From Oikopleura dioica (Eukaryota; Animalia; Chordata): a stretch of 64,000 bases of DNA. The translations under genes and the position numbers were made by a program. The DNA lies in NCBI GenBank assembly GCA_907165135.1, contig OU015566.1, positions 8,184,001-8,248,000 on the forward strand. The letters are read 5' to 3'. The notes under the pieces were generated by a model. The model made no database searches. It was not told the DNA's origin and worked only from the letters and a program-made list of their open reading frames with translations. Within the stretch, counting starts at the first letter, position 1. Each line of letters begins with the position of its first letter. This document shows positions 7,978-27,488 of the stretch, piece after piece.

Positions 7978-10900
7978 ATGGGCAAGAAGTTTCTTCCGTT
8001 TCTTTTTTCTTCATTTGTTAGAGCAATTTGCGTGAGAGAAGGCGCTAACGAATGCTGGCATTATACTGGCATCAATCATGATTTGGTGGTGAACACTTTA
8101 GGTTTGACAGAAAATCACATTCGACGAGCTTTCACGGATTTTTAAGGGGATAACTGTGGAAGGTATTTAAAAGCAAGCGAGTGGATAATCTTCCCAAATT
8201 ACTTCCAAGACGAGTCCATCGAAGATGCCGAAGCTCGACTCAATATCATCAGCGAAAGCTTGCCGCATCTCGACTACGAACAAAGGTTCACTGATTTTTT
8301 AACTCGTCTGAACTACAAAAGTACAGAAATAGATAAGAACGAGTTCAGTTTCTTTAATTGCTCCGGTTTAAATTCCGACTCTGCCCTTTAAATGAACGCG
8401 AAAGAAACTCGCAGAAGAAACGTAAAGGAATTTGTTAAGTGAATTGACTTGTGCGCTAATGTTCCCCAAATGTCAACGAAACATCTGCAGTACAAATTTG
8501 GCGTCGGGTTCTATTGAAAGCGATTATCATAATTCGAAAGACGTAGAAATAGAACCCTCGATAGAGCATACATATCTTTTCACTCAGTCGTATAATGTCA
8601 ATAAATGGAATTGCGAGAGAATTTCAAGTAAAAGTCGGCACATTTTCGATCCAATGAAAAAGTTAAAATATCTAAAAATTCAAAAAGAAGATAGAAATTT
8701 CTAACTAAAAAGATGCACACTGTCTTCACAAATGGTCAAGCTCGTCGAAAATCAAGATTTCACTGTGACGGTCTTCCAGAGTCGATTGAAAGAAAAATAG
8801 AAACAAAATCAATTCCATACACTCAGGGAGTTAACAGCGAAGAATGCCGACGGCGAGTGAAAACGCTCTATCATTTCAAAGACTGGATTTATGTTGAACG
8901 CTACTTGACTTGCTTGATAACTCTCTACGGCTCGAGCTCAATGAAGATTTATAAAATCGGAAGCTCAACTCGCAATTTGCCTCTTATCGCCGTAAAGGAG
9001 CCGGTTTTAAATTTTGAATAAAAGAAGTTCGAGTTTCGCTCCCTCTCTAAAATACCCTTGCAAAACAGATGCTTCCGAAAACCGTCGCTAAGATTACTGA
9101 GCCAGACACGGAAGAGACAAGAAGACATGCAAAGCCGAAAGTAAGACTGATGGGGAACATTCACGGAAACGAAGACCAGGTATTCACTAAATGAAATAAA
9201 CCCTTTTCAATTAATTCTATCGATCATTTTAGGGAATCTTCATTCTTCTGCCACTGATAAGAGACATTTTAGACGGCACACAAGAATATGCTCTCCTTAG
9301 AAAAAGCCTTGAATTGCACTTTTTGATTTCCGCAAATCCAGGTCAGTTCTAATATGTCGCATCGAGTGGGTTTTAATTATTTAGACGGATATCTACGTGC
9401 TCGAGCTACGTACCGCTCAAATGGAAAAATTTGCTGGGAACAGGTCACCAAAAACAATGTCATGCATAATGATGAGATTGGCGCCCTTTTAATGAACTTT
9501 CACGACATAAAAAGTGATTGAACGCGAATCGCGAAATGTCCGATTTATGTTCGCCACCATGGTGATCTATTTGAGACCTGTGGCCGCCAGAACCGGAATC
9601 GTGTTGATCTGAATCGCAATTTCCCGCTGCTCATAGAAGAGATCATAAAAACAAGAGAGCGTTTTGCTCAAACGGGATCACCCGTTTTTGCTGGTGCTGG
9701 AAATCAGGTAGCATTGGAATAAGCCAACTCATATCTATCTTTAGGTTTATATACCAATACCAAGCAGTTACTGGTCGTAAGTAACTACTGTAGTTCAGAC
9801 TCTGAATTTCAGAGAATGAATTTCAGAACTTGAACCTCTTATGCCTATTCTCCTGTATTTGATAACAAAACTTCAGCATCGGAAACGTGCAAGAGGAAAC
9901 GCTAAGCTTAATAAAGTGGACACGAAGCCGGAACTTTGTACTTTCCGGTAGGCTCTTAAATTTCACCACGAGTTTAATAAATCAAGTGCGCCCCGCCTTG
10001 TTAAGCATTATTTGGTACTTATAAACTGATTTCAGCGATGATTCATTCTGGTGCATGGGGCGCGTTCTAAAGCAGTTCATGCGCGAAAATAATCGAAAGC
10101 TGTGAGCTCCTTGGAGACACCGCATTTGCTTATTTTGGTGGTCGCGAAAAGTGACTACCAGGGGACTAGAACGCGCGCAAGGTCGTGAATTATCCTTATG
10201 ACACCTCAAAGCGTCACCCTTTGGCTGAGGCTCATGAAAATGAAGATGCCAATGCTTTCAAGAAGATTTCCAGGGACTTTGTCAAGCTTCACAAGACGTT
10301 GATAAAACAAGAGCCTTGCATGTAAGTTTTGATAGAGAATAATTTAATCAACTGCTTAGAAGCCGAGCTTTAGTTTGTTTTAGGCATGGAGCTGATGAGT
10401 TTTCGGAGAAGGGAATAACTAATGGTGCTGCATGGTATTCGACAATCGGCACACTTCAAGACTTCGAGTACATTGCGGAAGGAGTGATGTCTTTTACTCT
10501 CGAGCTTGGCTGCGAGAAGACAACTTCAAAGGCGAACCTTCCTGTTATCTATTCAGATGCGAAAGATGCAATGATTGACTTCATGCTATGGTTAAAAAAC
10601 TATTTTTATTCTCTGAAAGCAACCTTAGATCATAAATATTAACCAACTAAAAGTGGCATGGATACATGGGCATTAGGGGCAAAATCGAGGATGAAAAGGG
10701 CCGGGGAATTCCAAAAGCTGAAGTGTTCATTCAAGAGGTTCAAATTCATAAAAACAATCTTATGAGACTTCTCATTTCAAGAAATTTTGGAACGGAACGA
10801 CCGCGCTCAATCCATTGAGTACGCTAACTGATGATGATGGACACTACAACAAACTATTTTGGCCTGATGATATGACTGCCAGCATAACTTTATTCATCCA

Positions 10901-15010: not shown

Positions 15011-18000
15011 TTACTTTTTGTAGTCAATTTGTTCGGGCAATCCCTTATCCCAACCTTCAGGGATGTTGTGGCAGGTAGGGATTAGCCCGTAGTTGACAGT
15101 TGCACCAGCGTTGACGTACGGCAGCTTGCAGGCTAAAAATTGGATAAAATTTGATGATAAAAAGAGTTTTTTTACCTCGTGAACACTCGTTGATGAATCG
15201 GGAGAGGCACGGTCCTGTTTCTTTAGACGAGTTACTAACCGCGCTAAACCAGTCTTTGTACAAGCGCAGCGTATATCGGTCGATGTCTCTGTCAGTAATG
15301 CTCCAGAGCAAGGCCATTACTGACATAGACCCTGAGTCCAAGACCCTGGATTGATTAATTAGTATTAGCAATATATTATATATTTCAAACTTACTTTGTC
15401 ACTGCACCCCTCGGTTCAGTTCGACCATGATCGCGGAGTCTGCCGGAAGCACAGCCGATAAGGTGCATGGTGCTTTTTACACCTTTTCTGATCACACGTC
15501 CCCAGCCGCCAACGCAGTCGGAGCCGCTTCCATGCCCAGCAAAGACGTAGAGGTCGAATTTATTGAGTTTCTCAATCAACTCGGATGAATTCGGCATGAC
15601 GGACGCGTAACCGTTCCATTGCTTAACGCTCCTGAAGAAGTTTCCAACTGTCGCGGCCGAACTCGCGAGGTTGACCTGGTTGTCTACGACGTAGAGTAGA
15701 TTGGAGATGTCCATAGACCGTTTGCTCGCTGGTTGTCGAAGGAGGTACTCCGCATGTCTTACTGAGAGCATCCTAGAAATAAGCTATGGCAAAGCTTCAA
15801 AGCAACAATTTCGTACCTTGACATTCGAATTCCCTGACAAATGGGCATCCGTTCCATGGCGATCGATTGAACCACTCGTCCGAGGATGAGATATGTAGCG
15901 GTTGTCCGCTGATATTCCAATTCTTGAAAGACGTGGTTCTTTGCCAGACGATCGAGGTCGAGTTTAGTCACTCCAACGAGTCCAGCGACATTCGTCTTGC
16001 CGAGAGTGTTCAAATGAGACCAAGCCCGAATCGCATGGCTCAAAAAGTCGGCGTGAAGAGAGTTTTTGGGCTTGGGAACTGCATTGGTCCAAGTGATGCT
16101 TTTGGAGAATGTGAATAGAGCAAGAGCCGGACCAAGAACATCTAAAAAGAATATTTATTAAAGCCAAAGAAAAGATATTTTACCTGGGAGAACAGACAGC
16201 ACTAAATCCTTACAGTACTTTTCTCGTTCATCGCGCACCTTCCACCATTTGGTAGCGTTTTTGACATCTTTGCCAAGCTCTTCAGAGATCTTGTCGCACA
16301 TGTCGCGCATTCGCAGAGCCTCCTTGGCAAATGCATGACCATCGAATCCGATCGAAATACACTTCCCGTTGGGCTCCAAACGAGTGACGAGCGCGAGGCA
16401 ATTTTCGTATGTGCAGGATAGTGTCTTCGAAACATCTGGAATCAAGCTCACCAAGACGGCGTTATCATTCAGTTCCTGTCGCAGAAAAGGAAAGTCAATC
16501 CTGATATTCTCCGACAGATCTTCTGCTTGGATGAAGTTTTCTTTCGGAACTGAGCTGACATTGTTGGACATACGAGTATGAGCGCAGTACTGCGTGTCAA
16601 GAACTGCTCCAACGCCGTTAACATCAATGTGAAGCGCGGCTAGCTTTGATGAATTGCTCAAGACCATCGTGCTTTTCTGTGCGACTTGTTCCTGGCGCAA
16701 AATCTGGCCTATGCGAAGATTGTAGATCGCTCTGATGGTCTCCATGTCGCTGTTCTCCTTGGCGGTCGCGAGAGCTTCATCCAGAACGGCCTCTTCTGAG
16801 ATCAGCTGAGGCGAATCGCCTGCTCCAGTATGAGTACTGAAGATCGTGTTGATCTCAGACTCGATCGGAGAGACTGGTCGTGAACCGAAATTCTGGAGAC
16901 GAACACCCTCCGTCTTATCTTTTTGGCTCGTTTTGATGGGAGACAGATCTGGAATATCACCCATCGGTCCGACTCTCGCTTCTTCTTCAGGATCTTCAAA
17001 AATTGTGGCCCCGGCTCGATCTCCATCAGCGGCTTCTACTTTCATTCGACGAGCTGTAGCTCTCGTAGTCCGAGTTGTTCGAGTGGCCGAAACGGGAGTT
17101 CGAGGCTTATATTCAGCGTCGTTGATTTCTTTCTTGATTTTTGCGCTCTTTGGAGTTGCCAATGATATCGCCGCGTCGTCATTGAAAATTCGAAGCTTCT
17201 CTTTCTTCATTCTCTGTAGCTTCACATTGACCGGTTTCATCGGAGTAATCGCTGGAGTTTGATCGCCAGTTGTTTTCACTCTACCCCGTCGAGCGGGCGT
17301 CTTCACATCGCTGGTGATGACCATTTTTTGAAACGGTGCGGTTAGCTCAAGATTTTCCTTGTTCGCGTCGAAGGTTCTATTGTAAATGACGATTGCCACT
17401 TGCAATTTCGCGAATCGGCCGCACTTCTTTGGATTGACTTTCTCGGAGTTTCGGACAGGCTCGAGAGCATTTTTGACGTACTCAACAGCGTCAGATGGTC
17501 TATCGAGTTCCGTCGCGCGAAGAACGATTACGTATGCAAGCTCCAGGAGTAGCTGCGATAGTTGATGACCAGCGATAGCGATCTCTTTAAAGAGGAACAG
17601 GCCAGCGTTGACAGCTCGAGTAGGATCTGGATGAACACGGAACAAAGTTGTAAGTGCAATAACATAGTTCCGTGCAACATCGAGATCAAGCTTGCCAATT
17701 TTAGGAAGAACTGGAAGTTGAAATGTGAAGGCTTTTGTTGTTTCCGTTGTTGTTTTCTTCTTTATTTTCTTTGCCATCGGCGAGTCAGGGGTGAAACCGA
17801 AGAACTCTTCCTTGACTTTCGCAGTAGGCAAATGAGAGTTTGTTTGATCGACTTGGGAAGAATTTCTTCGGGGCGGGTCAAGTGAGATCGCCTGTGCTTT
17901 TGCTTGAGGATTGACTTCGCGCATAAATGGGTTGTCTTCGTTGATATCGAAGACTTTTAAAAGCGCTGGAACTTCGTCTTTCCACTTGCGCGTTTGACCT

Positions 18001-20883
18001 TCAAGCTCCAGTGCTCGTATTTGAAGTGTCTTCCCCATTATGTTGGCAGTCTGCAATCCCCAAATATCGGATAAAACAAGCAGCTCGTTGGAAAACATTC
18101 TCGCCTCGATCGACATGCCTCGTTTGATGAGATCATCGATGAAGTCGACACTTATCCAGATGGTTTTATCAAGCGCCCGCAGGGTCGCAATGATTTCTTT
18201 TCCAATTTTTTGGACTTTCATTGAACCCTCGGCCTTCGCCGAAGAAGCGAAGATCGTTTTGTAGAATTGCCGATCGCATGCACTCGACAGGAAAGTGATG
18301 ATGAGTTGAATGGCATAACGAAGGCCGCTTGTTTGATTCGCAGTTATCATCGAGCCCACATGACCAAAGGCCTTGTCATGATAATCTGACCAGCCGGAAG
18401 ATCCAGAGAGAGAGGTTTCTAACATGATTTGGGTGATGGACTCATCTTTCCAACCAATGGAGCTCTTTTTGGTCTCTGGGATGCCATCCTGGAACATCAT
18501 ATAACCAAAAGCAAGATGTTTCTTATCTTTCGAGGTCATATGGCAAACATTTGCTCGTTTCAGGGTCTTATGAATATCGTCGTCGTATTCGGGCTGGGTA
18601 GAGAGATGAGAATGCCGTCGCGCAACCCAAATTGACGAACCCAAGTCCATCACAAGATCACCGAGAAGCTCACTCACAGAAGCGTAAACTTTTGTCATCG
18701 GATAATACCAGTCGACGAGGGCAGTAAGCAGGCCTTTCAGGATCGTATTCCCAGCTTCTCGTTTTCCAAGAATCAAAAGAAGTTGCGCCGCAATGTAGTA
18801 CGTGTTGACATAGTTGCATACTTGCGACACAGAAGAAGTCTTTTTGAATTCTGTTTTGACCTTGATCTTGGATAATTTTTCAATGTCGAGTGAAGGGGGC
18901 TTCGAAGTGACTTTTTCCATTTTCTTGCTCCACGCGCCTTGAAGATCTCGTTGCCAAGTGGACAGGATCTTCCAGACGGTCGTCAGTTCGTCATTCTCAT
19001 CTCCGCCGGATCCGCTCATCGACGCAAGTTTTTTCGTCTCCTTCGGGAAGAATTCTTGCAATTGAAAAATGACGAGCTTGAGTAGGTCTTGATCTTCTTC
19101 CGTAAGTTTCTTGACGTCTCCGAACTCAAGAAGGGTATCGACGATTAGCACAACGGGCTCAGTTTTCTGCGGGATGCCATTCTCGCTCAGCGTGCTGATT
19201 AATATGCTCAAGAATCGGGCGCGTGATTCTTTCTCTACTTCGAACATATCGAAGAGCGAATTTTCGGAACAACGACATCGTTGATAAGGCTGAGAAAAAG
19301 TTGAGTGAGAAATAACTTTATGTAGACGATGTCCATTTTTGATAGTTGGCGGTTCTTAGGAAGATCGATTTCCATCTCTCTGAAGATTCTCACGCTGTTC
19401 GAGTTTTTCCAGCTGCAAAGATTGTTCGTTTCGCAAGTAATGGCGAGCTCGTTGATTGTCAATTCGATGAGATTCCAATGCTCCAGATTTGTGAAGTTAT
19501 CATCGTCTCTGGAAATCGAGTAGACGTACTTGAAAGAGCCTTCGAGATTTTTGAGCCCGGTCTCGACGATCTTGCGCTGCTTCGTTTTATCAAGATCGTT
19601 TCGTTTAGCGATCGTCTGGAGCACTCGAAGAAAGCTGTAGACTGAGAAGGCAGCATATTTGTGAGGGTGTTTGAATCTAGAACCGGTGAATCTACTCAAA
19701 GCTTCTGCCATGTGGCCTATCGATTCGTTGAGCGGAATCAGAACAGTCTCGAGAGCGAGGAGTACATTCGAGTCTTTTTCGGGCAGTGTGACGAGGTTTT
19801 GGCAGATATTGTGACAGATTTGCGCGAAGCCGTAGATGATCTCCTGGATGTCGTTTTCGACGATACCGCCAATAAGGCCATAAGGCGTGATGAACTTCCG
19901 AGTGAGATCTAAAATTTATACTTGAGAAATAATTTTTACTGGAGAAACTTACATTTGCTCATATATTTTATCAGTCGGGCCATGCAGACGAACTCGTGCT
20001 TTCTCCAGTTCTTTCCATTTGGAAAGCGGTTGAAGATGTCTTGCTTTAATGCGCTCATGAACGCTTTCAATTCTTTGTAAGTTTCTCGGATCGGCGATCC
20101 CAGCGCTTTCTTGTCGTCGAAGTCCATCATCTTTTTGTCGAGCGCTGGCACTTTGAATTTCTCGTCGATGAACTGTAGAAATTCATTTATGAGGCGGAGG
20201 CCGAGCCCAGGGACGCTTGATTGTTGGATTATGTCTTCGCGGAAGTCGTTGTAGAGCCGGCGACACTGCTGGTGAGTCGCCAACTCCCAGGTGTGGAAGA
20301 ACGCGCGCAAAAACTGAAAAATATGTTATTGAGATGATAGCTATCTAAGCGACCTTTCTACGAAGGTCAAAACACGGGCGGTAACGAACCCCCGACACCC
20401 GCGAGAAACCGGTAGATTTTATATTCTGATTGCTTACCCGTTTCGATTTTCCCCAACGCTCGAGCTTCAGCCACGCTTTTCGCCCGTCAATCCAAAGGTC
20501 ATCATCCAGCGTCATCATCAGAGTTGTGTGAGCCGCTGTGCTGTAAAGCTCCCACAGGTCCGTCTGTAAGCGAGTGCTGATGGCTGGAATGGAACTCGCA
20601 TATTTGGGAATGTTGGTAACCGTCAGATAGAGTTCCATGAGGTTATTAACGACTGAAGAGAGTTTTTTGTAGTCGACTGGGTTCTGCTTCTTTGCCGTTT
20701 TCGTCACGTAGTTGAACTCCATCTTAAAATTGCTATCAAACTATATTCTTGATCGTCAACATTCAACTAGAACTCTTTTACGAGTCTGCTCTAAGCTATC
20801 GTGATTCTTGATCTTACCTTGAAGGCCGCGGAAACGTTGCCAGCAGCGACCAGCTTCTGGTACTGAGCTTGGTCGTGGTCCAT
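15011..20883 (-). CDS. ESPL1: Separase (separin, peptidase C50)
   Basis: C-terminal catalytic motifs LYVFAGHGSG and LIGCASG, then ALLWSITDRDIDRY and CKLPYVNAGATVNYGL. Long helical N-terminal region includes the 1029-aa ORF 16158-19247. First exon MDHDQAQYQKLVAAGNVSAAFK (ATG 20883) splices GT-AG to MEFNY. Stop TAA 15011-15013. Confidence 0.93.
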
Positions 20884-21205: not shown

Positions 21206-24200
21206 TTAATTTATTTCGTTTTTACATTCTAACGCGTTTATTTCTAGTGGAACAGTTGAAAATGGAACTTTTGAACTAAGAAGAATATTTTCGATAAAGT
21301 AAGGAAATTTTACAGATAAGGCTCCGGTCTGAGTTCTGTGAGATTCTCGTATGTTCCTCTGAGACCGTAGAGCTTCCAAATCGGCGTATCGATGTGGTCG
21401 ACTTCGAGATCGGTCCTGTCGCAGCAGTAGTCCCAGCCGCCGCCTTCGATGAAGCACCAAGTGCCAATATCATTGTCGAAGTTGGAGCAGTAGTTGTGGC
21501 TTTTCTTGTAGAAGATGCCCATGTCCTTGAGCCGCATCGCCCAGCTGAAGTTCATCTTTGGATGCGCGTCAACATCCCAGAACTCGCGATCCCAATGCTT
21601 GTCGTACCAAAACGGATCCCATTCGATGCACGGCTTGCCCATCATTGTGTGGTTCTGCCCGTCTCCCATATGCTTCTTGTGGACCTCGTCATATCGAGGC
21701 TCTGATGTCCAGTTTTTGAAGTTCTTTGGCATTGGTGAGTGGCAGACTTTTTAGGATTTTTAAAACGAATGGCGCTATCTCGATAAATAATGTATACTTT
21801 CATCTATGAGGTATCTATTGAAATCATTCCTAATGGATATGCATTGAGCTTCTTGTGCTTGCAGACTTTTCCTAGTTGGAAAATCGTGTACGCTCCGTCT
21901 TTACGCTGCTTATCGTAAGTCAGCTCCGTTTGACCCTGGGTCTTTGCCTCTCTCTTACTCTCCCTTGGATGACGCCATTCGTAGATAGTACCGATGCAAG
22001 ACTGGTATCGATATTTGAGCTGAGTCTTCGTTGTCGCCGAGCAGTAGGTCATCTCTGTCTTTTGTTCGACCATGCCTTTTTAGTGTTGAAAAAAGCTATT
22101 CTATTTTATAGCGTTACAGAATTATATTGATAGATAAGTTTGATTATCTCTCAACACTTCCCCATGTAATGTCGATTGAAGGCCCTATCGTACGGAAGTT
22201 TTCTATGAGGGAAGTCGTAAATACTAGATTCACCAAGAATTTCCATAGGTTGTGTCCAATCTGGCTCCACGTGTTTACAGACCTTTAGACAAAATTATAC
22301 TATCTAAAATCTAAAATTCTACAAGAGAACCTTGAACAGCCTGTTCTCATTCTCATAATCGTCGCAAGTGACAGTGCAGTTCGGTCGCTGGAAGTAACAT
22401 CTTGTTTTGTCCGGGCTAAAAGATTTCTGTAAGCTGTTCAAGGAAAAAAGCTTCATACTTGTCTCGATCTTCCTTTGCGCGTTTCACATCCGCCCGTACA
22501 GCATCAAGTCTCATCTCAGGACGCGCTAGCCAACCTTTTCTCCTCTTTGGATAGGAGATAAACTTTCTGTAGTTCAGGTTGTACTGATCGATGACAAGAG
22601 TCTCATCAGTAGAGTATTGCAAGTAATCGAATGTGTCGTTAACGCCCTTGTGTTCTTTTTTATACTCGAAGCAACTAAAAAATAATCAAGAACAAAGATA
22701 AATTTTGAAAGTCTTACTTGGTGAGGAGTCGAGATCGCGTGTCATTTGTGACTTTGAGACTGGCAGAGGAGACGAAGGAGCAGTTGAAAGAATAGATTTT
22801 TTCTTCCTTCATTTTCATGCCCATGAAGTAGGTATCCGCACCGCGAATGTACACAGTTCCTTTGCAAAGTTTTAAGAATTTCAATGCTTAACTCTCCTAT
22901 TACCTTGAATCTGTCCGAGAGGCATCAAATCATCACGAACATTATGCCGATGATAAACAGGGACTAAACGAAGAGGCATTTGGATTTCTCGATCAAGAGA
23001 GGGAATCATATCAGCAGCGGCAGGATGAAGCATACGCTTTTGAATGTATGGGAAAACGTCGAGGTTGAAGACCATCAAGCCATTTCTGTTCTCTCGTTTA
23101 CCTCCAGCGGACTGGATAACATTCTCTGCCAACATATAACAAACTCGGTTGTGGCAGGTCGTGTACTGATTTCTCCATTCCCACTGGTAATCCCAGTATG
23201 TCTTTTGATGATGGTGTTCGGTGTTGTTCATGTATCGCATCAAGTTGAAGTGAATGACTCTCTTTGCTCGTTGAACAATGATAACATCGTCATCTGCAAT
23301 TCGAAGCTCGTCGTAAGCCATCTCGTACTCGGATTGATCCCGAGGGATGATTCTGTTAGGAATCAAAAAGTACTCCGTAAAATCGTGGTTGATAACATAA
23401 CATCGCACTTGGTACTCTGGAACGACTTTTTCGTCACCATCATCAAGGCAGTATAGAATATGTTGGCTAATCAATTGTTCGTTTATTCGATTTAACTGCA
23501 TTCTACTTACGTGTGAGTATCACAAATATGTCGAGCATCAGCCATTTTACGAATCGGGAAATGGCCCATTCGAACGATTGAAAACGGAACAAACGCTTCA
23601 CTGGGTTATTTGAAAGTTAAATTTAATTTTCGGAGTGTAAAATTAAAAATGAGCAAATTCAAGTTGCTATTCAATTTACTCAATTTTAACCCGTTCGCTA
23701 ACATCTCTCCCTCATCAGTATTTAATCCAAGCCAGATATCGCCATATTGAACATGACAACTTTGTGAAAATTTGTAAATAATTTCCTTGTCATTTCCGAA
23801 ATCCTCCGTTGCATCCCACATAATTCCGCTCGTTAAGTTGACAGCCGCGATGTATTGAGGCTTAAAAAGTCTTAGAATATTTTTTTAATAACTTTTACCT
23901 TCGGGAAGAAAATAGTTTCGGGTTCAAGATGGACGTTTAGCGGCACATCAGGAGTATTCGTCACCCAAGAGACGACCCCTAACGCTCGTTTGGTATCAAT
24001 TTTGACCGCAGTCTCGACTTCCTGGAAATGTATATCGTGATAACCTCTCCAAAGTGAGTCCTTTCCGTCAACCCAATCGAAATCTCGAGCATCACCGCCT
24101 TCGTCGTTACCGTTTGAGTTCTCATCAAAACGCTTGACTTGAAGGACATCGTTGTGTTCTCTCTTTAGAAGTCGAATTCGATCGGTTGAGAGGGTAGAAA

Positions 24201-27200
24201 AGAGGAATCCGTGGGTGTGCGAGTTGTTAGGGATCTTTTGGTAGCATGAGACGCCATCCAAAGCTTGGAAATAGATCCAATCAAAGTTCTAAAGAGATTT
24301 AACCTGTGCTTTTCATATATTCATCTTACGTCATAGTACTTGTCTCCAGTAAAAGTTGCATCTGTTGAGCAGTTTTTAACACAGACGGGATCAAAAATGG
24401 TCTGTATACAAAATTCCTCAACGAGAAGACCGGAAAAGACCTTATTCAAAAAGAAAATCGCCGCTGCGAAAATAAAACAAAACAGGAGTTTGACCATGAT
24501 TTTCCAAAGGGATGAGTGTCGACGAACCCACATAGGCACAATTTGCGTCCAGACCCAAAGTGGAAACTCATCTCGCTCAGATAATTCCCAGTATTTGGCG
24601 TCGAGAACTCTCGAAAGAGCACCAATAAGTGGACAAATAATGAAAATACTGATGAATGTACCCCAGCTCCAAACTGCTCTATCTGTGTTGTAGTTGAGCG
24701 TTTCCACCATTGATGCAGTTTCATTAAAATACGGAAGCGGAACTGAGCCATTCTTCATGACTGTGTTCGCTTTGACGTAGTTGTCCTCCCAGTAAATTGT
24801 TTTGTTGTACATGAGATTCATGTAGGTCACTGTTTCGCGAAGACTTTCCAGCGACTGGAAATTCTGATCAATGGAGTTGACAGTCATTCGATCAAGGTTA
24901 TCCTTATCGTACTGTTTTGAATAAATGTCCTGCATCGCAAGCTGTTTGTCCCACTTGTAATAATAACCACCGTACGCATTGATTTCAACTTCAGCATGCG
25001 CTTCTAAGTCGTAACGGAACTCCGCCGGAGTGTATTTGAAAATATACGAATAACATTCCAAATATTTACGCTTGAAGAAAGGGTTGTTCAAGACTACCTC
25101 CAGTCCATTTTCGTTAATGGTATCATTTTTATAGCAGACGTTTTGCAGTGCATCGTTATAAATACAGATGTCCTCGAAACCAAACTCGTCGATATTTTTG
25201 ATGATGTCACCCATCACGCGAGGATGTGTGTAGTAGTCGTAATAGTGCGTTGCGTTTGGAACGCGCTCCCATTGATAAGGATAGTGAATGAAATCTTCTG
25301 TCGTATGCGTATGGGGCATGTCGGATATCAAAATGTTCATTTCGGCCGTTAGCAACGACGGCTTCTGACCGAGGGAATACCGGAAATACGTATCTGTGTA
25401 CAACGGGAAGGTGTTGTCAATCATGTAGACGTGCTCACTAGCATCGTACAAGTAGAAGCCATTCTCCCTGTAAAAAGCGATACCACAAAGCAAAAACATC
25501 CAAGTGACGATTTCGACTACGGTTCCATAGACAAGAGTCATGATCGTCTTTAGTGAAACTTTGTCTTTTGGTGTGAGTAGACCAACGTGCATTTCGAGGA
25601 AGTTGAGCTGGATGACGCCTTGATAGATACCGTACTTCATTCGGATGTCGTATGAAATCCATTTTTGCTTGAAAGACTTTACGTAGAGAGAGATCATGTT
25701 GATGATCATAGTCAACATCGGCACAAATATAAAGAGGAGGATACCCATGAGAACATAGAGCTTCTCTCCTTTCTTCTCCATATCAACTCGTTTCCATTTC
25801 CATCGTTCATCTCGGAAACCAATGTGAAGAATCAAAAACCCAATTACCGAACCCATCAAAATCGACATCGTAATGTGAACTAATCGGAGAAACTGGCTGA
25901 CGAATGACATTGGTCGACCACGACGGAAAATGTGCAGCATATTCGCCGAATCGAGAATTGTACTGAAAATTGTCCACGCATCAAGCAATCCTGAGATAAT
26001 GATCCAAACTCGTTTGCCGACAAAGATGAAATAAGTAGAAAGCGGGACGGAGGTGATATCCTGGTTTTGATGGAAGTAAATGAAGATCAACATACAAAGC
26101 TTGTAAGTTAGTTGGGTACTCTGTTCCATACCGATTTCTCGGAGTTTGAAATGGATCAAAGAAATACCTCCATAAGCTCTGACGTTCTTACTTTCTTCGT
26201 CATCTCCGACTGTTGTCATTTGATCCACGAGTTTGACTTTTTCATAGCACTGCAACATGACAGACGTAATGCACCCTAGCGCAATGACAGCACAGATAAC
26301 AGGGACCCTTATGAACGGATTGTCAGGAAGTTCGCGCATCAGTTGTTCCTCAACGTCGTTAGGACGAATCATCGCAAACATAATTTGGAAAGACGGAACA
26401 ACAATAACGTTAAAAGCAACAGCAAGACCAACAGCCTTTTCAAAACCCAAGTTAGAGCTCAAAAAAAGATATGCGGAGAAAATATCAGCGGACAAATCAA
26501 TGAATGGCAAAATAACGGCAAAGTATTGCATATTAGTTTGCATTTTCGACATTGCAGATGGACTCTGGACTAATCCAGAAGCGTTGAAGTTGCTGATCGC
26601 CCATTTCGGATACTCAGTTGTAACTCCCACTGTATCATAATTGTCGAAAGGAGACACAGTTTCTTCAATAAGCTCGGGTAACGCAGACTTATCGAAAATA
26701 AAAGGTGTGGAGCTATCCAAAAGTCGTTTGTAGTGTTCTTGCTGTTTCTTTCTAAGCTGAGCCGCCTCTTCTTCGGGAGAAAGACCTGTTTCTTCATCTA
26801 TTTCTTCTTTTACCTTTTTGCTGCCTTTGCTTTTCTTTGAAAGAAGAGAAAAGTTGGTGAACATTCTCTTTTGAGCTTCTTGATCTTCTCTCTCCTTTGC
26901 ATCGGCAGGAGTTTCTGAGGGATCCGACTTCTTATCATCTTCATTATCCTCATCTGATTCTTCTTCTTCATCATCATCATCATCTGACTCCTCGTCTTCG
27001 TCGATAGGAGTGATCGACTCAGTATCCTTGGATCGACTGGTAGTTGGTTCATCTTCATCATCTGACACTGGAGTGATCTCTTCTTCTGATCTCGATTTGG
27101 AAGGAGCTCGTTTTATCTGAGTGCTTCCCTGAGAAATGTTGTCGCCATCACTCTGAGCTGATGAACCAGCCTCTGTTGAGCCAGCTTCTGTCTTTTCCTC

Positions 27201-27488
27201 TGACGATTTTTCCTTGTATGGTGGTGGGTCCTCTTTCGGATAAGACGGAGGTTTCCCTTCAGAAGAAGGTTGCTCCGATGATGGAGCCTCCTCACTGACC
27301 TCACTACTCGCATTTACTAATAAGTCTTCATCAATATACTATTACCTTTCTGGACCATCAGCAATTGAAGGGATGTCATTATCATCTTGCTCATCATCTA
27401 CCTCTGGCTGTCGCTTATCAGTCTCTAAGTCATCTGGAACTGGATCCTTCCCCTCTGTCGGGTCAACTTTCGACTTAGAGTTGCCCAT
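21206..27488 (-). CDS. XK-related (XKR scramblase family-like) multi-pass membrane protein with a long extracellular C-terminal extension (C-type-lectin-like segment and kringle domain); roughly 1,800 aa
   Basis: The 915-aa ORF 24321-27068 has XK-like segments (KLREIGMEQSTQLTYKLCMLI; RPMSFVSQFLRLVHITMSI; GIYQGVIQLNFLE; LVYGTVVEIV). In-frame GT-AG introns join it to the ORFs 23872-24261, 23606-23821, 22881-23501 and 22416-22622; the links onward to 21804-22073 and 21310-21732 are less clean. The last exon has a kringle pattern (C..HMGDGQNHTMMGKPCIEW..HNYCSNFDNDIGTWCFIEGGGWDYC). Start MGNSKS at 27488. The 3' end is either 21310 or 21206. Confidence 0.7.

What the first reader, a model, noticed from the sequence alone, without database searches (positions are those of the whole stretch)
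21206..27488. XK-related scramblase-like protein apparently fused to an extracellular lectin-like/kringle tail
What look like several separate ORFs splice into one frame through canonical short introns (YYD|NFDW at about 24289-24329; FPK|PQY; HT|QHIL; IQ|GTVY; LTN|CFEY; DN|PDKT). The core resembles 10-TM XKR lipid scramblases but has a ~250-aa Tyr-rich extracellular loop before TM10 and an extra TM helix. That helix would place several hundred N-glycosylated residues outside, including CHVQYGDIWLGL (C-type-lectin-like) and a terminal kringle. I know of no XKR protein with ligand-binding ectodomains; this could be a receptor-gated scramblase. The weakest junctions are between 22330 and 22075.
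Basis: partly seen in the sequence, partly recalled or inferred. Interest (0 to 1): 0.75.

Follow-up and report, generated by a model that had tools for sequence, protein, structure and literature searches.

The report
XKR-like membrane protein with kringle tail
One real 12-exon Oikopleura dioica gene encodes a roughly 1,855-residue membrane glycoprotein whose multi-pass core looks like an XK-related lipid scramblase, joined to a large orphan extracellular tail ending in a kringle, an architecture not described for this family.

Summary
Window 27488-21310 (minus strand) is one Oikopleura dioica gene. Comparison of three O. dioica lineages shows conserved, third-codon-biased exons separated by diverged short introns.

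Two exons missing from the public model are real:
- a 30-codon exon at about 23600-23511;
- the terminal kringle exon, 21746-21310, joined by a conserved GA-AG intron.

The XKR reading of the core is probable but unproven.
- For: language-model neighbours are XK-related clusters (0.91-0.93; 21 of 30 hits). The D-x-x-x-D and K-x-x-E-x-x-x-E-x-x-x-Q-L motifs match the spacing of essential Xkr8 residues.
- Against: Pfam PF09815 and all sequence searches of solved structures find no XKR.
- Untested: both AlphaFold jobs failed (pLDDT 37 and 32), so no fold comparison was possible.

The kringle has sub-threshold Pfam support, PDB hits that are all kringles, and six cysteines. The C-type-lectin claim has no support; the rest of the tail is orphan. 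"Receptor-gated scramblase" is speculation. A built-in partner, like Kell for XK, is at least as plausible.

The parts
27346..27488 (-). Exon 1. ATG at 27488. It begins M-G-N-S-K-S-K, an N-myristoylation consensus that is also present in Norway (M-G-S-S-S-S-K).
27295..27345 (-). Intron 1, 51 nt, GT-AG in both lineages.
24330..27294 (-). Exon 2 (2,965 nt). It holds an acidic low-complexity cytosolic N-terminal region, the whole multi-pass core, the long loop and the two last TM segments.
   Evidence: codon-position differences 93/57/493
25464..26525 (-). XKR-like core, ORF aa 182-535. Seven hydrophobic segments plus two weaker amphipathic ones, compatible with two repeats of 2 TM, hairpin, 2 TM.
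26484..26501 (-). Motif I-D-L-S-A-D in the first TM segment. Two Asp four residues apart, as D26/D30 of Xkr8 and D125/D129 of Xkr4.
26109..26147 (-). Motif K-L-R-E-I-G-M-E-Q-S-T-Q-L. The K, E, E spacing equals K/R134-E137-E141 of Xkr8. The E-x-S-x-Q core is invariant in all 26 aligned family members.
24681..25463 (-). 261-aa loop (ORF aa 536-796). Tyr 10%, five N-x-S/T sequons; predicted extracellular.
24591..24680 (-). Hydrophobic segment at ORF aa 797-826. It would be the last helix of an XKR core, running out to in.
24405..24518 (-). Extra hydrophobic segment at ORF aa 851-888. It would carry the C-terminal tail to the outside.
23899..24288 (-). Exon 3. It follows intron 2 (24289-24329, 41 nt, GT-AG). 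No start codon or signal peptide of its own.
23691..23860 (-). Exon 4. It follows intron 3 (23861-23898, 38 nt). It holds the C-H-V-Q-Y-G-D-I-W-L-G-L stretch. No lectin signal was found.
23511..23600 (-). Exon 5, about 30 codons and in-frame. It is absent from the public Norwegian model but conserved in three lineages. Its 5' boundary is either 23600 (GT-AG, possible only in this lineage) or 23595 (the AAG|C acceptor shared by all three, which needs a phase-1 non-canonical donor).
22904..23466 (-). Exon 6. It follows intron 5 (23467-23510, 44 nt, GT-AG).
22718..22859 (-). Exon 7. It follows intron 6 (22860-22903, 44 nt, GT-AG).
22459..22674 (-). Exon 8. It follows intron 7 (22675-22717, 43 nt, GT-AG).
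22331..22415 (-). Exon 9. It follows intron 8 (22416-22458, 43 nt, GT-AG).
22153..22282 (-). Exon 10. It follows intron 9 (22283-22330, 48 nt, GT-AG). Its 3' end is ambiguous. 22153 gives a GA-AG intron after a Cys codon conserved in three lineages. 22162 gives GG-AG here and GC-AG in the public model.
21830..22075 (-). Exon 11. The frame is fixed by conservation (differences 8/7/43). If read through past 21830 it reaches a stop at 21804; these read-through tails are not conserved among lineages.
21747..21829 (-). Proposed intron 11, 83 nt, GA-AG. The donor T-T-A-G|G-A-A-Y-G-A is conserved in three lineages and fits the published O. dioica GA-AG context (AG before, A after).
21310..21746 (-). 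Exon 12, the terminal kringle-like exon including the stop (21310-21312). Six Cys; the first lies upstream of the only ATG of this lineage. It is not annotated in the Norwegian assembly.
21237..21242 (-). First AATAAA after the gene, about 65 nt past the exon 12 stop. There is none between exon 11 and exon 12 in either lineage.

Best explanation
Window 27488-21310 (minus strand) is a single 12-exon protein-coding gene of Oikopleura dioica, about 1,855 codons long. Its product is most likely a plasma-membrane glycoprotein built as follows.

1. An N-myristoylated, very acidic cytosolic N-terminal region of about 300 aa.
2. A multi-pass core that is a highly diverged member of, or close relative to, the XK-related (XKR) lipid scramblase family. 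It keeps the acidic residues on the first helix (D-x-x-x-D) and the K-x-x-E-x-x-x-E stretch that Xkr8 needs for scrambling.
3. A 261-aa Tyr-rich glycosylated extracellular loop inserted before the last core helix.
4. One extra TM helix that turns the chain outward.
5. An extracellular tail of about 880 aa, Cys-containing, with 11 sequons. It is orphan apart from a C-terminal kringle-like domain.

Inferred mechanism: the core moves phospholipids between leaflets as XKR proteins do. The extra helix and ectodomain act as a covalently attached partner, in the orientation of Kell on XK (type II: N-terminus inside, C-terminus outside), used for trafficking, stabilisation or binding of an extracellular ligand or matrix.

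Shown: the gene structure, purifying selection on every exon, the hydropathy pattern, the motifs and the kringle-like sequence signature. Inferred: XKR homology, topology and scrambling activity. Speculative: the role of the ectodomain.
For: Gene and exons:
- The public orthologue model maps collinearly on the window.
- The exon/intron conservation contrast and third-position bias hold for E2-E12.
- A third lineage, L007, confirms E5 and E12.

Kringle exon belongs to the same reading frame:
- Codons upstream of this lineage's ATG (C-H-S-P) differ from Norway only at synonymous sites.
- Norway and L007 have no ATG at that position.
- An in-frame stop lies directly before the AG acceptor in all three lineages.
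- The phase-1 GA donor with an AG|GAA context is conserved and matches the published O. dioica GA-AG class.
- There is no poly(A) signal between E11 and E12.

XKR-like core:
- Atlas features for the whole ORF give XK-related clusters as the top 3 hits (0.86-0.87; 187-190 of 256 features shared).
- For the core alone, hits 2 and 3 (0.92, 0.91) are XK-related clusters and hit 1 (0.93) is an unnamed cluster; all three share 205-212 features. Of the 30 hits, 21 are XK-related and none belongs to another named family.
- The motif positions match the spacing of D26/D30 and K/R134-E137-E141 shown essential in Xkr8, and the three conserved acidic residues of Xkr4.
- The E-x-S-x-Q core is invariant across 26 family members.

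Topology:
- An odd number of hydrophobic segments lies before the sequon-rich loop, and two lie between the loop and the tail.
- The myristoylation consensus is conserved.
- Kringle signature.
Against: - Pfam PF09815 (XK-related) gives no hit at E<=10 on the ORF, its parts, the orthologue or the metagenomic relatives.
- phmmer and profile searches of all PDB sequences, which include Xkr8 and Xkr9 structures, find no XKR.
- An exhaustive phmmer of 1.8 billion representatives finds only O. dioica copies and two short fragments.
- AlphaFold2 gave unusable models (pLDDT 37.4 for the core; 32.5 for the kringle exon), so the fold was never compared.
- The Pro of the XKR E-x-x-P-Q stretch (P316 of Xkr4) is Thr here.
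- The cytosolic C-terminal regulatory tail of Xkr4/8/9 is absent.
- The atlas tool states its scores are leads and were not calibrated for parts of proteins.
Confidence: 0.6

Rival explanations
1. The gene model is right, but the core is not an XKR homologue. It would be a lineage-restricted multi-pass family of unknown fold and function. Its resemblance to XKR would then be generic (helix lengths, composition, short charged motifs).
For: All HMM-based tests fail. phmmer on 1.8 billion representatives finds no XKR. Atlas recognition for the whole ORF is low (1757) and scores below 0.9 are only leads. Short motifs can match by chance.
Against: For the core alone, 21 of 30 feature neighbours are XK-related and no other named family appears, with 205-212 of 256 features shared. 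The two motifs fall in the expected helices, in the expected order, with the exact spacing of the residues essential in Xkr8.
Confidence: 0.22
2. The kringle exon (21746-21310) is a separate downstream cistron, for example trans-spliced in an operon. The membrane protein would then end at the read-through stop at 21804, as in the public model.
For: The public Norwegian model stops before it. The donor required is non-canonical (GA). Only 57 nt separate the read-through stop from the acceptor, and this lineage has an ATG 14 nt inside the exon.
Against: That ATG is absent in Norway and L007, yet the codons before it, including the first kringle Cys, are conserved with synonymous-only changes. 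A stand-alone product would lack a signal peptide and, in two lineages, the first Cys. The read-through tails after 21830 differ in all three lineages. There is no AATAAA between the exons. GA-AG introns with this context are common in O. dioica.
Confidence: 0.1
3. Exons 3-11 (the orphan tail) belong to a different gene from the TM core, and the two are fused only by annotation.
For: Nothing beyond the lack of RNA data. Prokaryote-style gene callers on metagenomic contigs stop at 24321.
Against: Exon 3 has no start codon or signal peptide. The 41-nt GT-AG intron is conserved and in phase. The public eukaryotic model joins them. The tail needs the preceding TM helix to reach the outside, where its sequons and kringle make sense.
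Confidence: 0.03

Closest known systems
XK-related (XKR) scramblases: Xkr8-basigin, Xkr9, Xkr4, CED-8 (PF09815; PDB 7DCE, 7P14)
   Same: - A multi-pass core of about 350-400 aa whose helix pattern is compatible with two repeats of 2 TM, hairpin, 2 TM.
- D-x-x-x-D on the first helix and K-x-x-E-x-x-x-E-x-x-x-Q-L on the helix after the first hairpin, with the spacing of the residues essential for Xkr8 scrambling.
- Nearest language-model neighbours are XKR clusters.
   Different: - No Pfam or PDB sequence match.
- The Pro of E-x-x-P-Q is replaced.
- A 261-aa extracellular insertion lies before the last core helix.
- There is no cytosolic C-terminal regulatory tail. Instead there is a ninth TM helix and an ectodomain of about 880 aa.
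- There is a long acidic myristoylated N-terminal region.
- Activity is untested.
XK-Kell complex (XK disulfide-linked to the type II glycoprotein Kell); from established knowledge, not tested here
   Same: An XKR-type core associated with a single-pass helix oriented N-in/C-out that carries a large glycosylated ectodomain. The extra helix plus tail here has that orientation.
   Different: Here the partner-like part is fused in the same polypeptide. Its ectodomain shows no M13 peptidase or other known domain except a kringle.
Kringle-bearing membrane proteins (Kremen1/2 appear among the PDB hits; ROR1/2 and MuSK are named from general knowledge)
   Same: A single extracellular kringle-like module with the N-Y-C-x-N-x-D ... 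W-C signature and six Cys.
   Different: Those are type I single-pass receptors with membrane-distal or central kringles. Here the kringle is the extreme C-terminus of a multi-pass protein. It is about 30 aa longer between the first and last Cys and has adjacent Cys5-Cys6. It scores below the Pfam threshold.
Public record CBY19523.1 / E4XEM8_OIKDI (unnamed protein product, O. dioica Norway)
   Same: Orthologue: 92% identity over the core, with the same junctions for most introns.
   Different: The public model lacks exon 5 and the kringle exon and carries no family or function annotation.

Membership tests
XK-related (PF09815) | Match to the Pfam family model at or above its gathering score | tested here: not met
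   No PF09815 hit even at E<=10 for the 915-aa ORF, the core pieces, orthologue P0005, or relatives P0015/P0016 and the L003/L005 exons.
XK-related (PF09815) | Sequence similarity to solved XKR structures (Xkr8, Xkr9, Xkr4, XK) | tested here: not met
   phmmer and profile hmmsearch against all PDB sequences at E<=10 list no XKR chain.
XK-related (PF09815) | Fold: 8 TM helices plus re-entrant helices in two pseudo-symmetric repeats | tested here: inconclusive
   AlphaFold2 model of the core has pLDDT 37.4 and pTM 0.27, too poor for a fold search. The hydropathy pattern is compatible.
XK-related (PF09815) | Three conserved acidic residues: two Asp four apart on TM1 and one Glu on TM3 (D26/D30/E141 in Xkr8; D125/D129/E313 in Xkr4) | tested here: met
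   I-D-L-S-A-D at ORF aa 190-195 in the first hydrophobic segment, and the E of M-E-Q-S-T-Q-L at aa 315. Spacing and helix order are as. The equivalence is by motif position, not by a significant alignment.
XK-related (PF09815) | Basic residue and second Glu on the same helix (K/R134, E137 in Xkr8), essential for scrambling | tested here: met
   K308-x-x-E311-x-x-x-E315 against 134-137-141. The second Glu is not kept in the metagenomic relatives.
XK-related (PF09815) | Cytosolic C-terminal tail that plugs the core and is released by caspase or kinase (Xkr4/8/9) | tested here: not met
   After the presumed last core helix come a 24-aa linker, another hydrophobic segment and an extracellular-type tail. 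There is no cytosolic C-terminus.
XK-related (PF09815) | Lipid scrambling activity | not testable with these tools
   Needs expression or reconstitution.
Kringle (PF00051) | Match to the Pfam model at gathering score | tested here: not met
   E=3.7e-4, 21.2 bits against a cut-off of 34.3; profile positions 14-74 of 79 are covered.
Kringle (PF00051) | Six Cys in kringle order, plus the G-x-x-C-x-x-W and N-Y-C-x-N-x-D ... W-C signatures | tested here: met
   Six Cys (C1, C39, C86, C97, C107, C108) invariant in two lineages. G-K-P-C-I-E-W and H-N-Y-C-S-N-F-D-N-D-I-G-T-W-C-F align to the corresponding kringle stretches of plasminogen and urokinase. Cys5 and Cys6 are adjacent, which is unusual.
Kringle (PF00051) | Specificity of hits among solved structures | tested here: met
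   All 37 PDB sequences at E<=1 are kringle proteins. The best is plasminogen at E=9.3e-7; single kringles score about 0.003-0.01.
Kringle (PF00051) | Kringle fold | tested here: inconclusive
   AlphaFold2 with a two-sequence alignment gave pLDDT 32.5.
C-type lectin-like domain (PF00059) | Match to the family model or to solved C-type lectin domains | tested here: not met
   No Pfam hit at E<=10 for the orthologous region P0005:1000-1190 or for window exons 3 and 4. No PDB hit at E<=10.
C-type lectin-like domain (PF00059) | Four conserved Cys forming two disulfides around the W-I-G-L core | tested here: not met
   Exons 3, 4 and 5 hold one Cys each. Only the W-L-G-L tetrapeptide resembles the motif.

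The most novel reading that the evidence does not exclude
This is a natural single-chain fusion of an XKR scramblase core with a Kell- or basigin-like ectodomain subunit. Lipid scrambling, or a derived lipid-handling function, would be controlled from outside the cell by what the long loop and the kringle-bearing tail bind. This would be the first XKR gated or targeted by an extracellular domain of its own. A related, still unplaced family of marine eukaryote genes shares the core.
Probability: 0.2. Interest if true: 0.75.

Novelty: new variant of a known kind. Interest (0 to 1): 0.55.

Why it matters
XKR scramblases are known as compact proteins of about 400-650 aa. They are regulated from the cytosol by caspase cleavage or phosphorylation of a terminal tail, and they depend on separate single-pass partners (basigin or neuroplastin for Xkr8, Kell for XK).

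A chordate protein that keeps the scrambling residues would show a different way to control or target an XKR core. It replaces the cytosolic tail with an extra helix and a large ectodomain, and it carries a 261-aa extracellular insertion. It would also give a natural cis-linked model for how partner helices dock.

The work also corrects a public gene model, which lacks two conserved exons. It documents conserved GA-AG splicing in this gene across three O. dioica lineages.

If the core turns out not to be XKR, the finding reduces to an orphan lineage-specific membrane glycoprotein with a kringle. That would be of modest interest.

Tried and rejected
No transcript evidence was obtained. Logan, JGI and ENA contigs carrying fragments are genomic and read through into introns.
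- Structure: AlphaFold2 on the core with a 27-row alignment gave pLDDT 37.4. On the kringle exon with 2 rows it gave 32.5. Both are unusable, so no fold search was run, because matches of such models are meaningless.
- Sequence links to XKR: Pfam at E<=10. PDB phmmer and profile searches, including short windows around the two motifs. Exhaustive phmmer of 1.84 billion representatives. Word-indexed searches with the protein and with a profile. None reached a canonical XKR.
- Profile-profile comparison: no XKR sequence was obtainable from the tools, so hhalign against the XKR family could not be run.
- Metagenome scan with the family profile: it returned only another O. dioica contig.
- Flanking exons of the metagenomic relatives (L003, L005): they look collinear and carry D-Y-I-[ST]-D, but pairwise BLAST is not significant. 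I do not count them as proven homologues outside the central exon.
- LrgA hit (E=0.002, 18.5 bits against a cut-off of 28): rejected as a hydrophobic-segment artefact.
- Tail: no Pfam, PDB or word-search relatives.
- Literature: a motif-string search found nothing useful.
Exons were searched by reference, and the public orthologue P0005 was used where a multi-exon query was needed.
Full report
**What is in the sequence**

The minus strand between 27488 and 21310 carries a chain of ORFs, the largest being 915 codons at 27068-24321.

The organism is Oikopleura dioica. The only close database relative of the large ORF is a cluster of O. dioica proteins at 92% identity. This cluster includes the Norwegian reference protein CBY19523.1 / E4XEM8 (P0005, 1,649 aa, "unnamed protein product", no Pfam domain).

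tblastn of P0005 maps collinearly on window 27488-21819.

**Is the splicing real?**

I used three-lineage comparison instead:
- the window;
- Norway (L001);
- a third lineage from an ENA assembly (L007; 86% nt identity to Norway and 73-80% to the window).

A global alignment of window against Norway shows 70-93% identity in every proposed exon. Identity falls sharply, with indels, in every proposed intron.

Differences inside exons are concentrated at third codon positions: E2 93/57/493, E3 8/2/59, E5 3/0/10, E11 8/7/43, E12 21/16/64. No exon holds a stop in its assigned frame.

Nine of the eleven introns, 38-90 nt long, can be drawn as GT-AG in this lineage. One of these, I4, has no GT-AG solution in Norway or L007. 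My exon table sums to a multiple of three, about 1,855 codons. Exons were searched by reference, and P0005 served where a multi-exon query was needed.

**Two exons that the public model lacks**

*Exon 5.* A stretch of about 30 codons (about 23600-23511) sits inside what the Norwegian model treats as one long intron.
- It is 87% identical between window and Norway and is also present in L007. Nearly all changes are synonymous.
- Its 5' junction is ambiguous. A GT-AG solution exists only in this lineage (23690/23600). An AAG|C acceptor shared by all three lineages (23596/23595) needs a phase-1 non-canonical donor.

*Exon 12, the kringle exon (21746-21310).* It is conserved in all three lineages but unannotated in Norway. 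Several observations say it is the last coding exon of this gene and not a gene of its own:
- The codons C-H-S-P upstream of this lineage's only ATG differ from Norway only at synonymous positions. They include the first kringle cysteine.
- Norway and L007 have no ATG there.
- An in-frame stop lies immediately before the AG acceptor in all three lineages.
- The only phase-compatible donor beginning with G is T-T-A-G|G-A-A-Y-G-A at 21829, and it is conserved in all three.
- GA-AG introns with AG before and A after the GA are a documented, frequent class in O. dioica (PMC7072748).
- The read-through tails after 21830 differ in all three lineages.
- There is no AATAAA between the exons. The first one lies about 65 nt after the exon 12 stop, in the window and in Norway alike.

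The public model uses GC-AG. A GA donor after a conserved Cys codon works in all three lineages. The frames on both sides are fixed by conservation, so only two or three residues are in doubt.

**Anatomy of the product**

- *N-terminus.* Exon 1 begins M-G-N-S-K-S-K, an N-myristoylation consensus conserved in Norway. A very acidic low-complexity region follows.
- *Core.* Hydropathy gives seven clear hydrophobic segments at ORF aa 182-535, plus two weaker ones.
- *Loop.* A 261-aa loop follows, with 10% Tyr and five sequons.
- *Last segments.* Two more segments lie at 797-826 and 851-888.
- *Tail.* It spans the end of E2 and E3-E12, holds about 25 Cys and 11 sequons, and ends in the kringle-like domain.

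This gives a cytosolic N-terminus, seven passes before the loop, and two passes between loop and tail. The topology is self-consistent, with both the loop and the tail outside. It is an inference, not a measurement.

**Is the core XKR-like?**

Against:
- Pfam PF09815 gives nothing at E<=10 for the ORF, its parts, the orthologue or the relatives.
- PDB sequence searches, by single sequence, by profile and by motif windows, list no XKR.
- An exhaustive phmmer over 1.84 billion representatives finds only O. dioica plus two short fragments.
- AlphaFold2 failed (pLDDT 37.4), so the fold could not be compared.

For:
- The ESM-Atlas feature search puts XK-related clusters first for the whole ORF (0.86-0.87; 187-190 of 256 shared features).
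- For the core alone, the best hit (0.93) is an unnamed cluster and the next two (0.92, 0.91) are XK-related; all three share 205-212 features. Of the 30 hits, 21 are XK-related and no other named family appears.
- The first hydrophobic segment carries I-D-L-S-A-D. The helix after the first hairpin-like segment carries K-L-R-E-I-G-M-E-Q-S-T-Q-L.
- In Xkr8 the residues D26, D30, K/R134, E137 and E141 line the proposed lipid path and are each required for scrambling (PMC8500837).
- Xkr4 has the corresponding three conserved acidic residues D125, D129 and E313 (PMC12334663).
- The spacings 4 and 3+4, the helix order and the following Q-L all agree. The Pro three residues after the Glu (P316 of Xkr4) is Thr here.

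A profile search brought in about 22 exon-sized fragments (140-209 aa) from marine metagenomes in which E-x-S-x-Q is invariant. Neighbouring ORFs on two contigs carry D-Y-I-[ST]-D in a first-helix-like segment. Those flanking ORFs are not significantly similar by BLAST.

I rate XKR kinship at about 0.7. By the membership table it fails the HMM criteria, meets the residue criteria, and the fold criterion is untested.

**The ectodomain**

*Kringle.* Pfam gives E=3.7e-4, below its threshold. All 37 PDB hits are kringles, aligned on the N-Y-C-x-N-x-D ... W-C and G-x-x-C-x-x-W stretches. Six cysteines are invariant between lineages. The AlphaFold2 model was useless. I accept it as a diverged kringle.

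*C-type lectin.* The idea rests on a W-L-G-L tetrapeptide. There is no Pfam or PDB signal, and there is one cysteine per exon in that region. I reject it as unsupported.

*The rest.* The remainder of the tail has no detectable relatives.

**How it probably works**

The most likely reading is a diverged XKR-type lipid scramblase core whose usual cytosolic C-terminal regulator has been replaced. In its place are a ninth helix and a large glycosylated ectodomain, with a second large extracellular insertion.

The orientation of the extra helix and tail (N-in, C-out) is that of Kell, the type II partner of XK. This comes from established knowledge and was not tested here. Activity, localisation and ligand are all untested.

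**Novelty**

The gene is in public databases only as an unnamed, domain-less and incomplete model. No paper in the searched library links Oikopleura with XK-related proteins, scramblases or kringles among the top hits.

I class it as a new variant of a known kind, conditional on the XKR assignment.

Noticed in passing
L001:11529-12028 and L001 about 9780-9870 (Norwegian O. dioica scaffold FN653042.1): The public model CBY19523.1 lacks two conserved coding exons: the 30-codon exon 5 and the terminal kringle exon. It ends at a read-through stop. The kringle ORF is unannotated there.
   Followed up: yes
P0016-P0037; L002, L003, L004 (ENA ERZ27294083 and a TARA assembly): A multi-copy family of exon-sized ORFs (140-209 aa) from marine metagenomes shares the central helices of the core, with an invariant M-A-R-E-A-S-I-Q-L-V-Y-like stretch. 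At least 22 distinct paralogues or alleles are present. The source organism is unknown, and none has a Pfam hit.
   Followed up: partly
L005:3186-5143 (ENA ERZ508537, NODE_1410, 13 kb): A more distant relative has at least three collinear exons: a first-helix D-Y-I-T-D exon, the central exon P0015, and an L-K-Y-G-I-Y exon. The contig ends before any loop or tail could be seen.
   Followed up: partly
L003:2562-3188: In one metagenomic relative, the ORF after the central exon continues past the last visible TM segment into a hydrophilic stretch of at least 60 aa. The long extracellular loop may therefore be a family trait and not an O. dioica novelty. Similarity is not significant by BLAST (E=0.27).
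   Followed up: partly
window 22152-22161 and 23596-23691; L007 and L001 equivalents: Within this one gene, three introns need non-canonical donors (GA, GG or GC) in at least one lineage. The donor type appears to differ between lineages at the same intron.
   Followed up: partly
window 16158-19247 (-) and 19235-20722 (-); L001:14436-15519: The downstream neighbour in the window is a minus-strand gene with a 1,029-codon ORF. In Norway the next called gene downstream is a ZP-domain gene on the opposite strand. This may be a local synteny difference between lineages.
   Followed up: no
window 26900-27060: The acidic run in the N-terminal region is about 60 nt longer here than in Norway: two fully gapped 30-column bins at window 26974-26915. 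It is a fast-evolving low-complexity segment.
   Followed up: no
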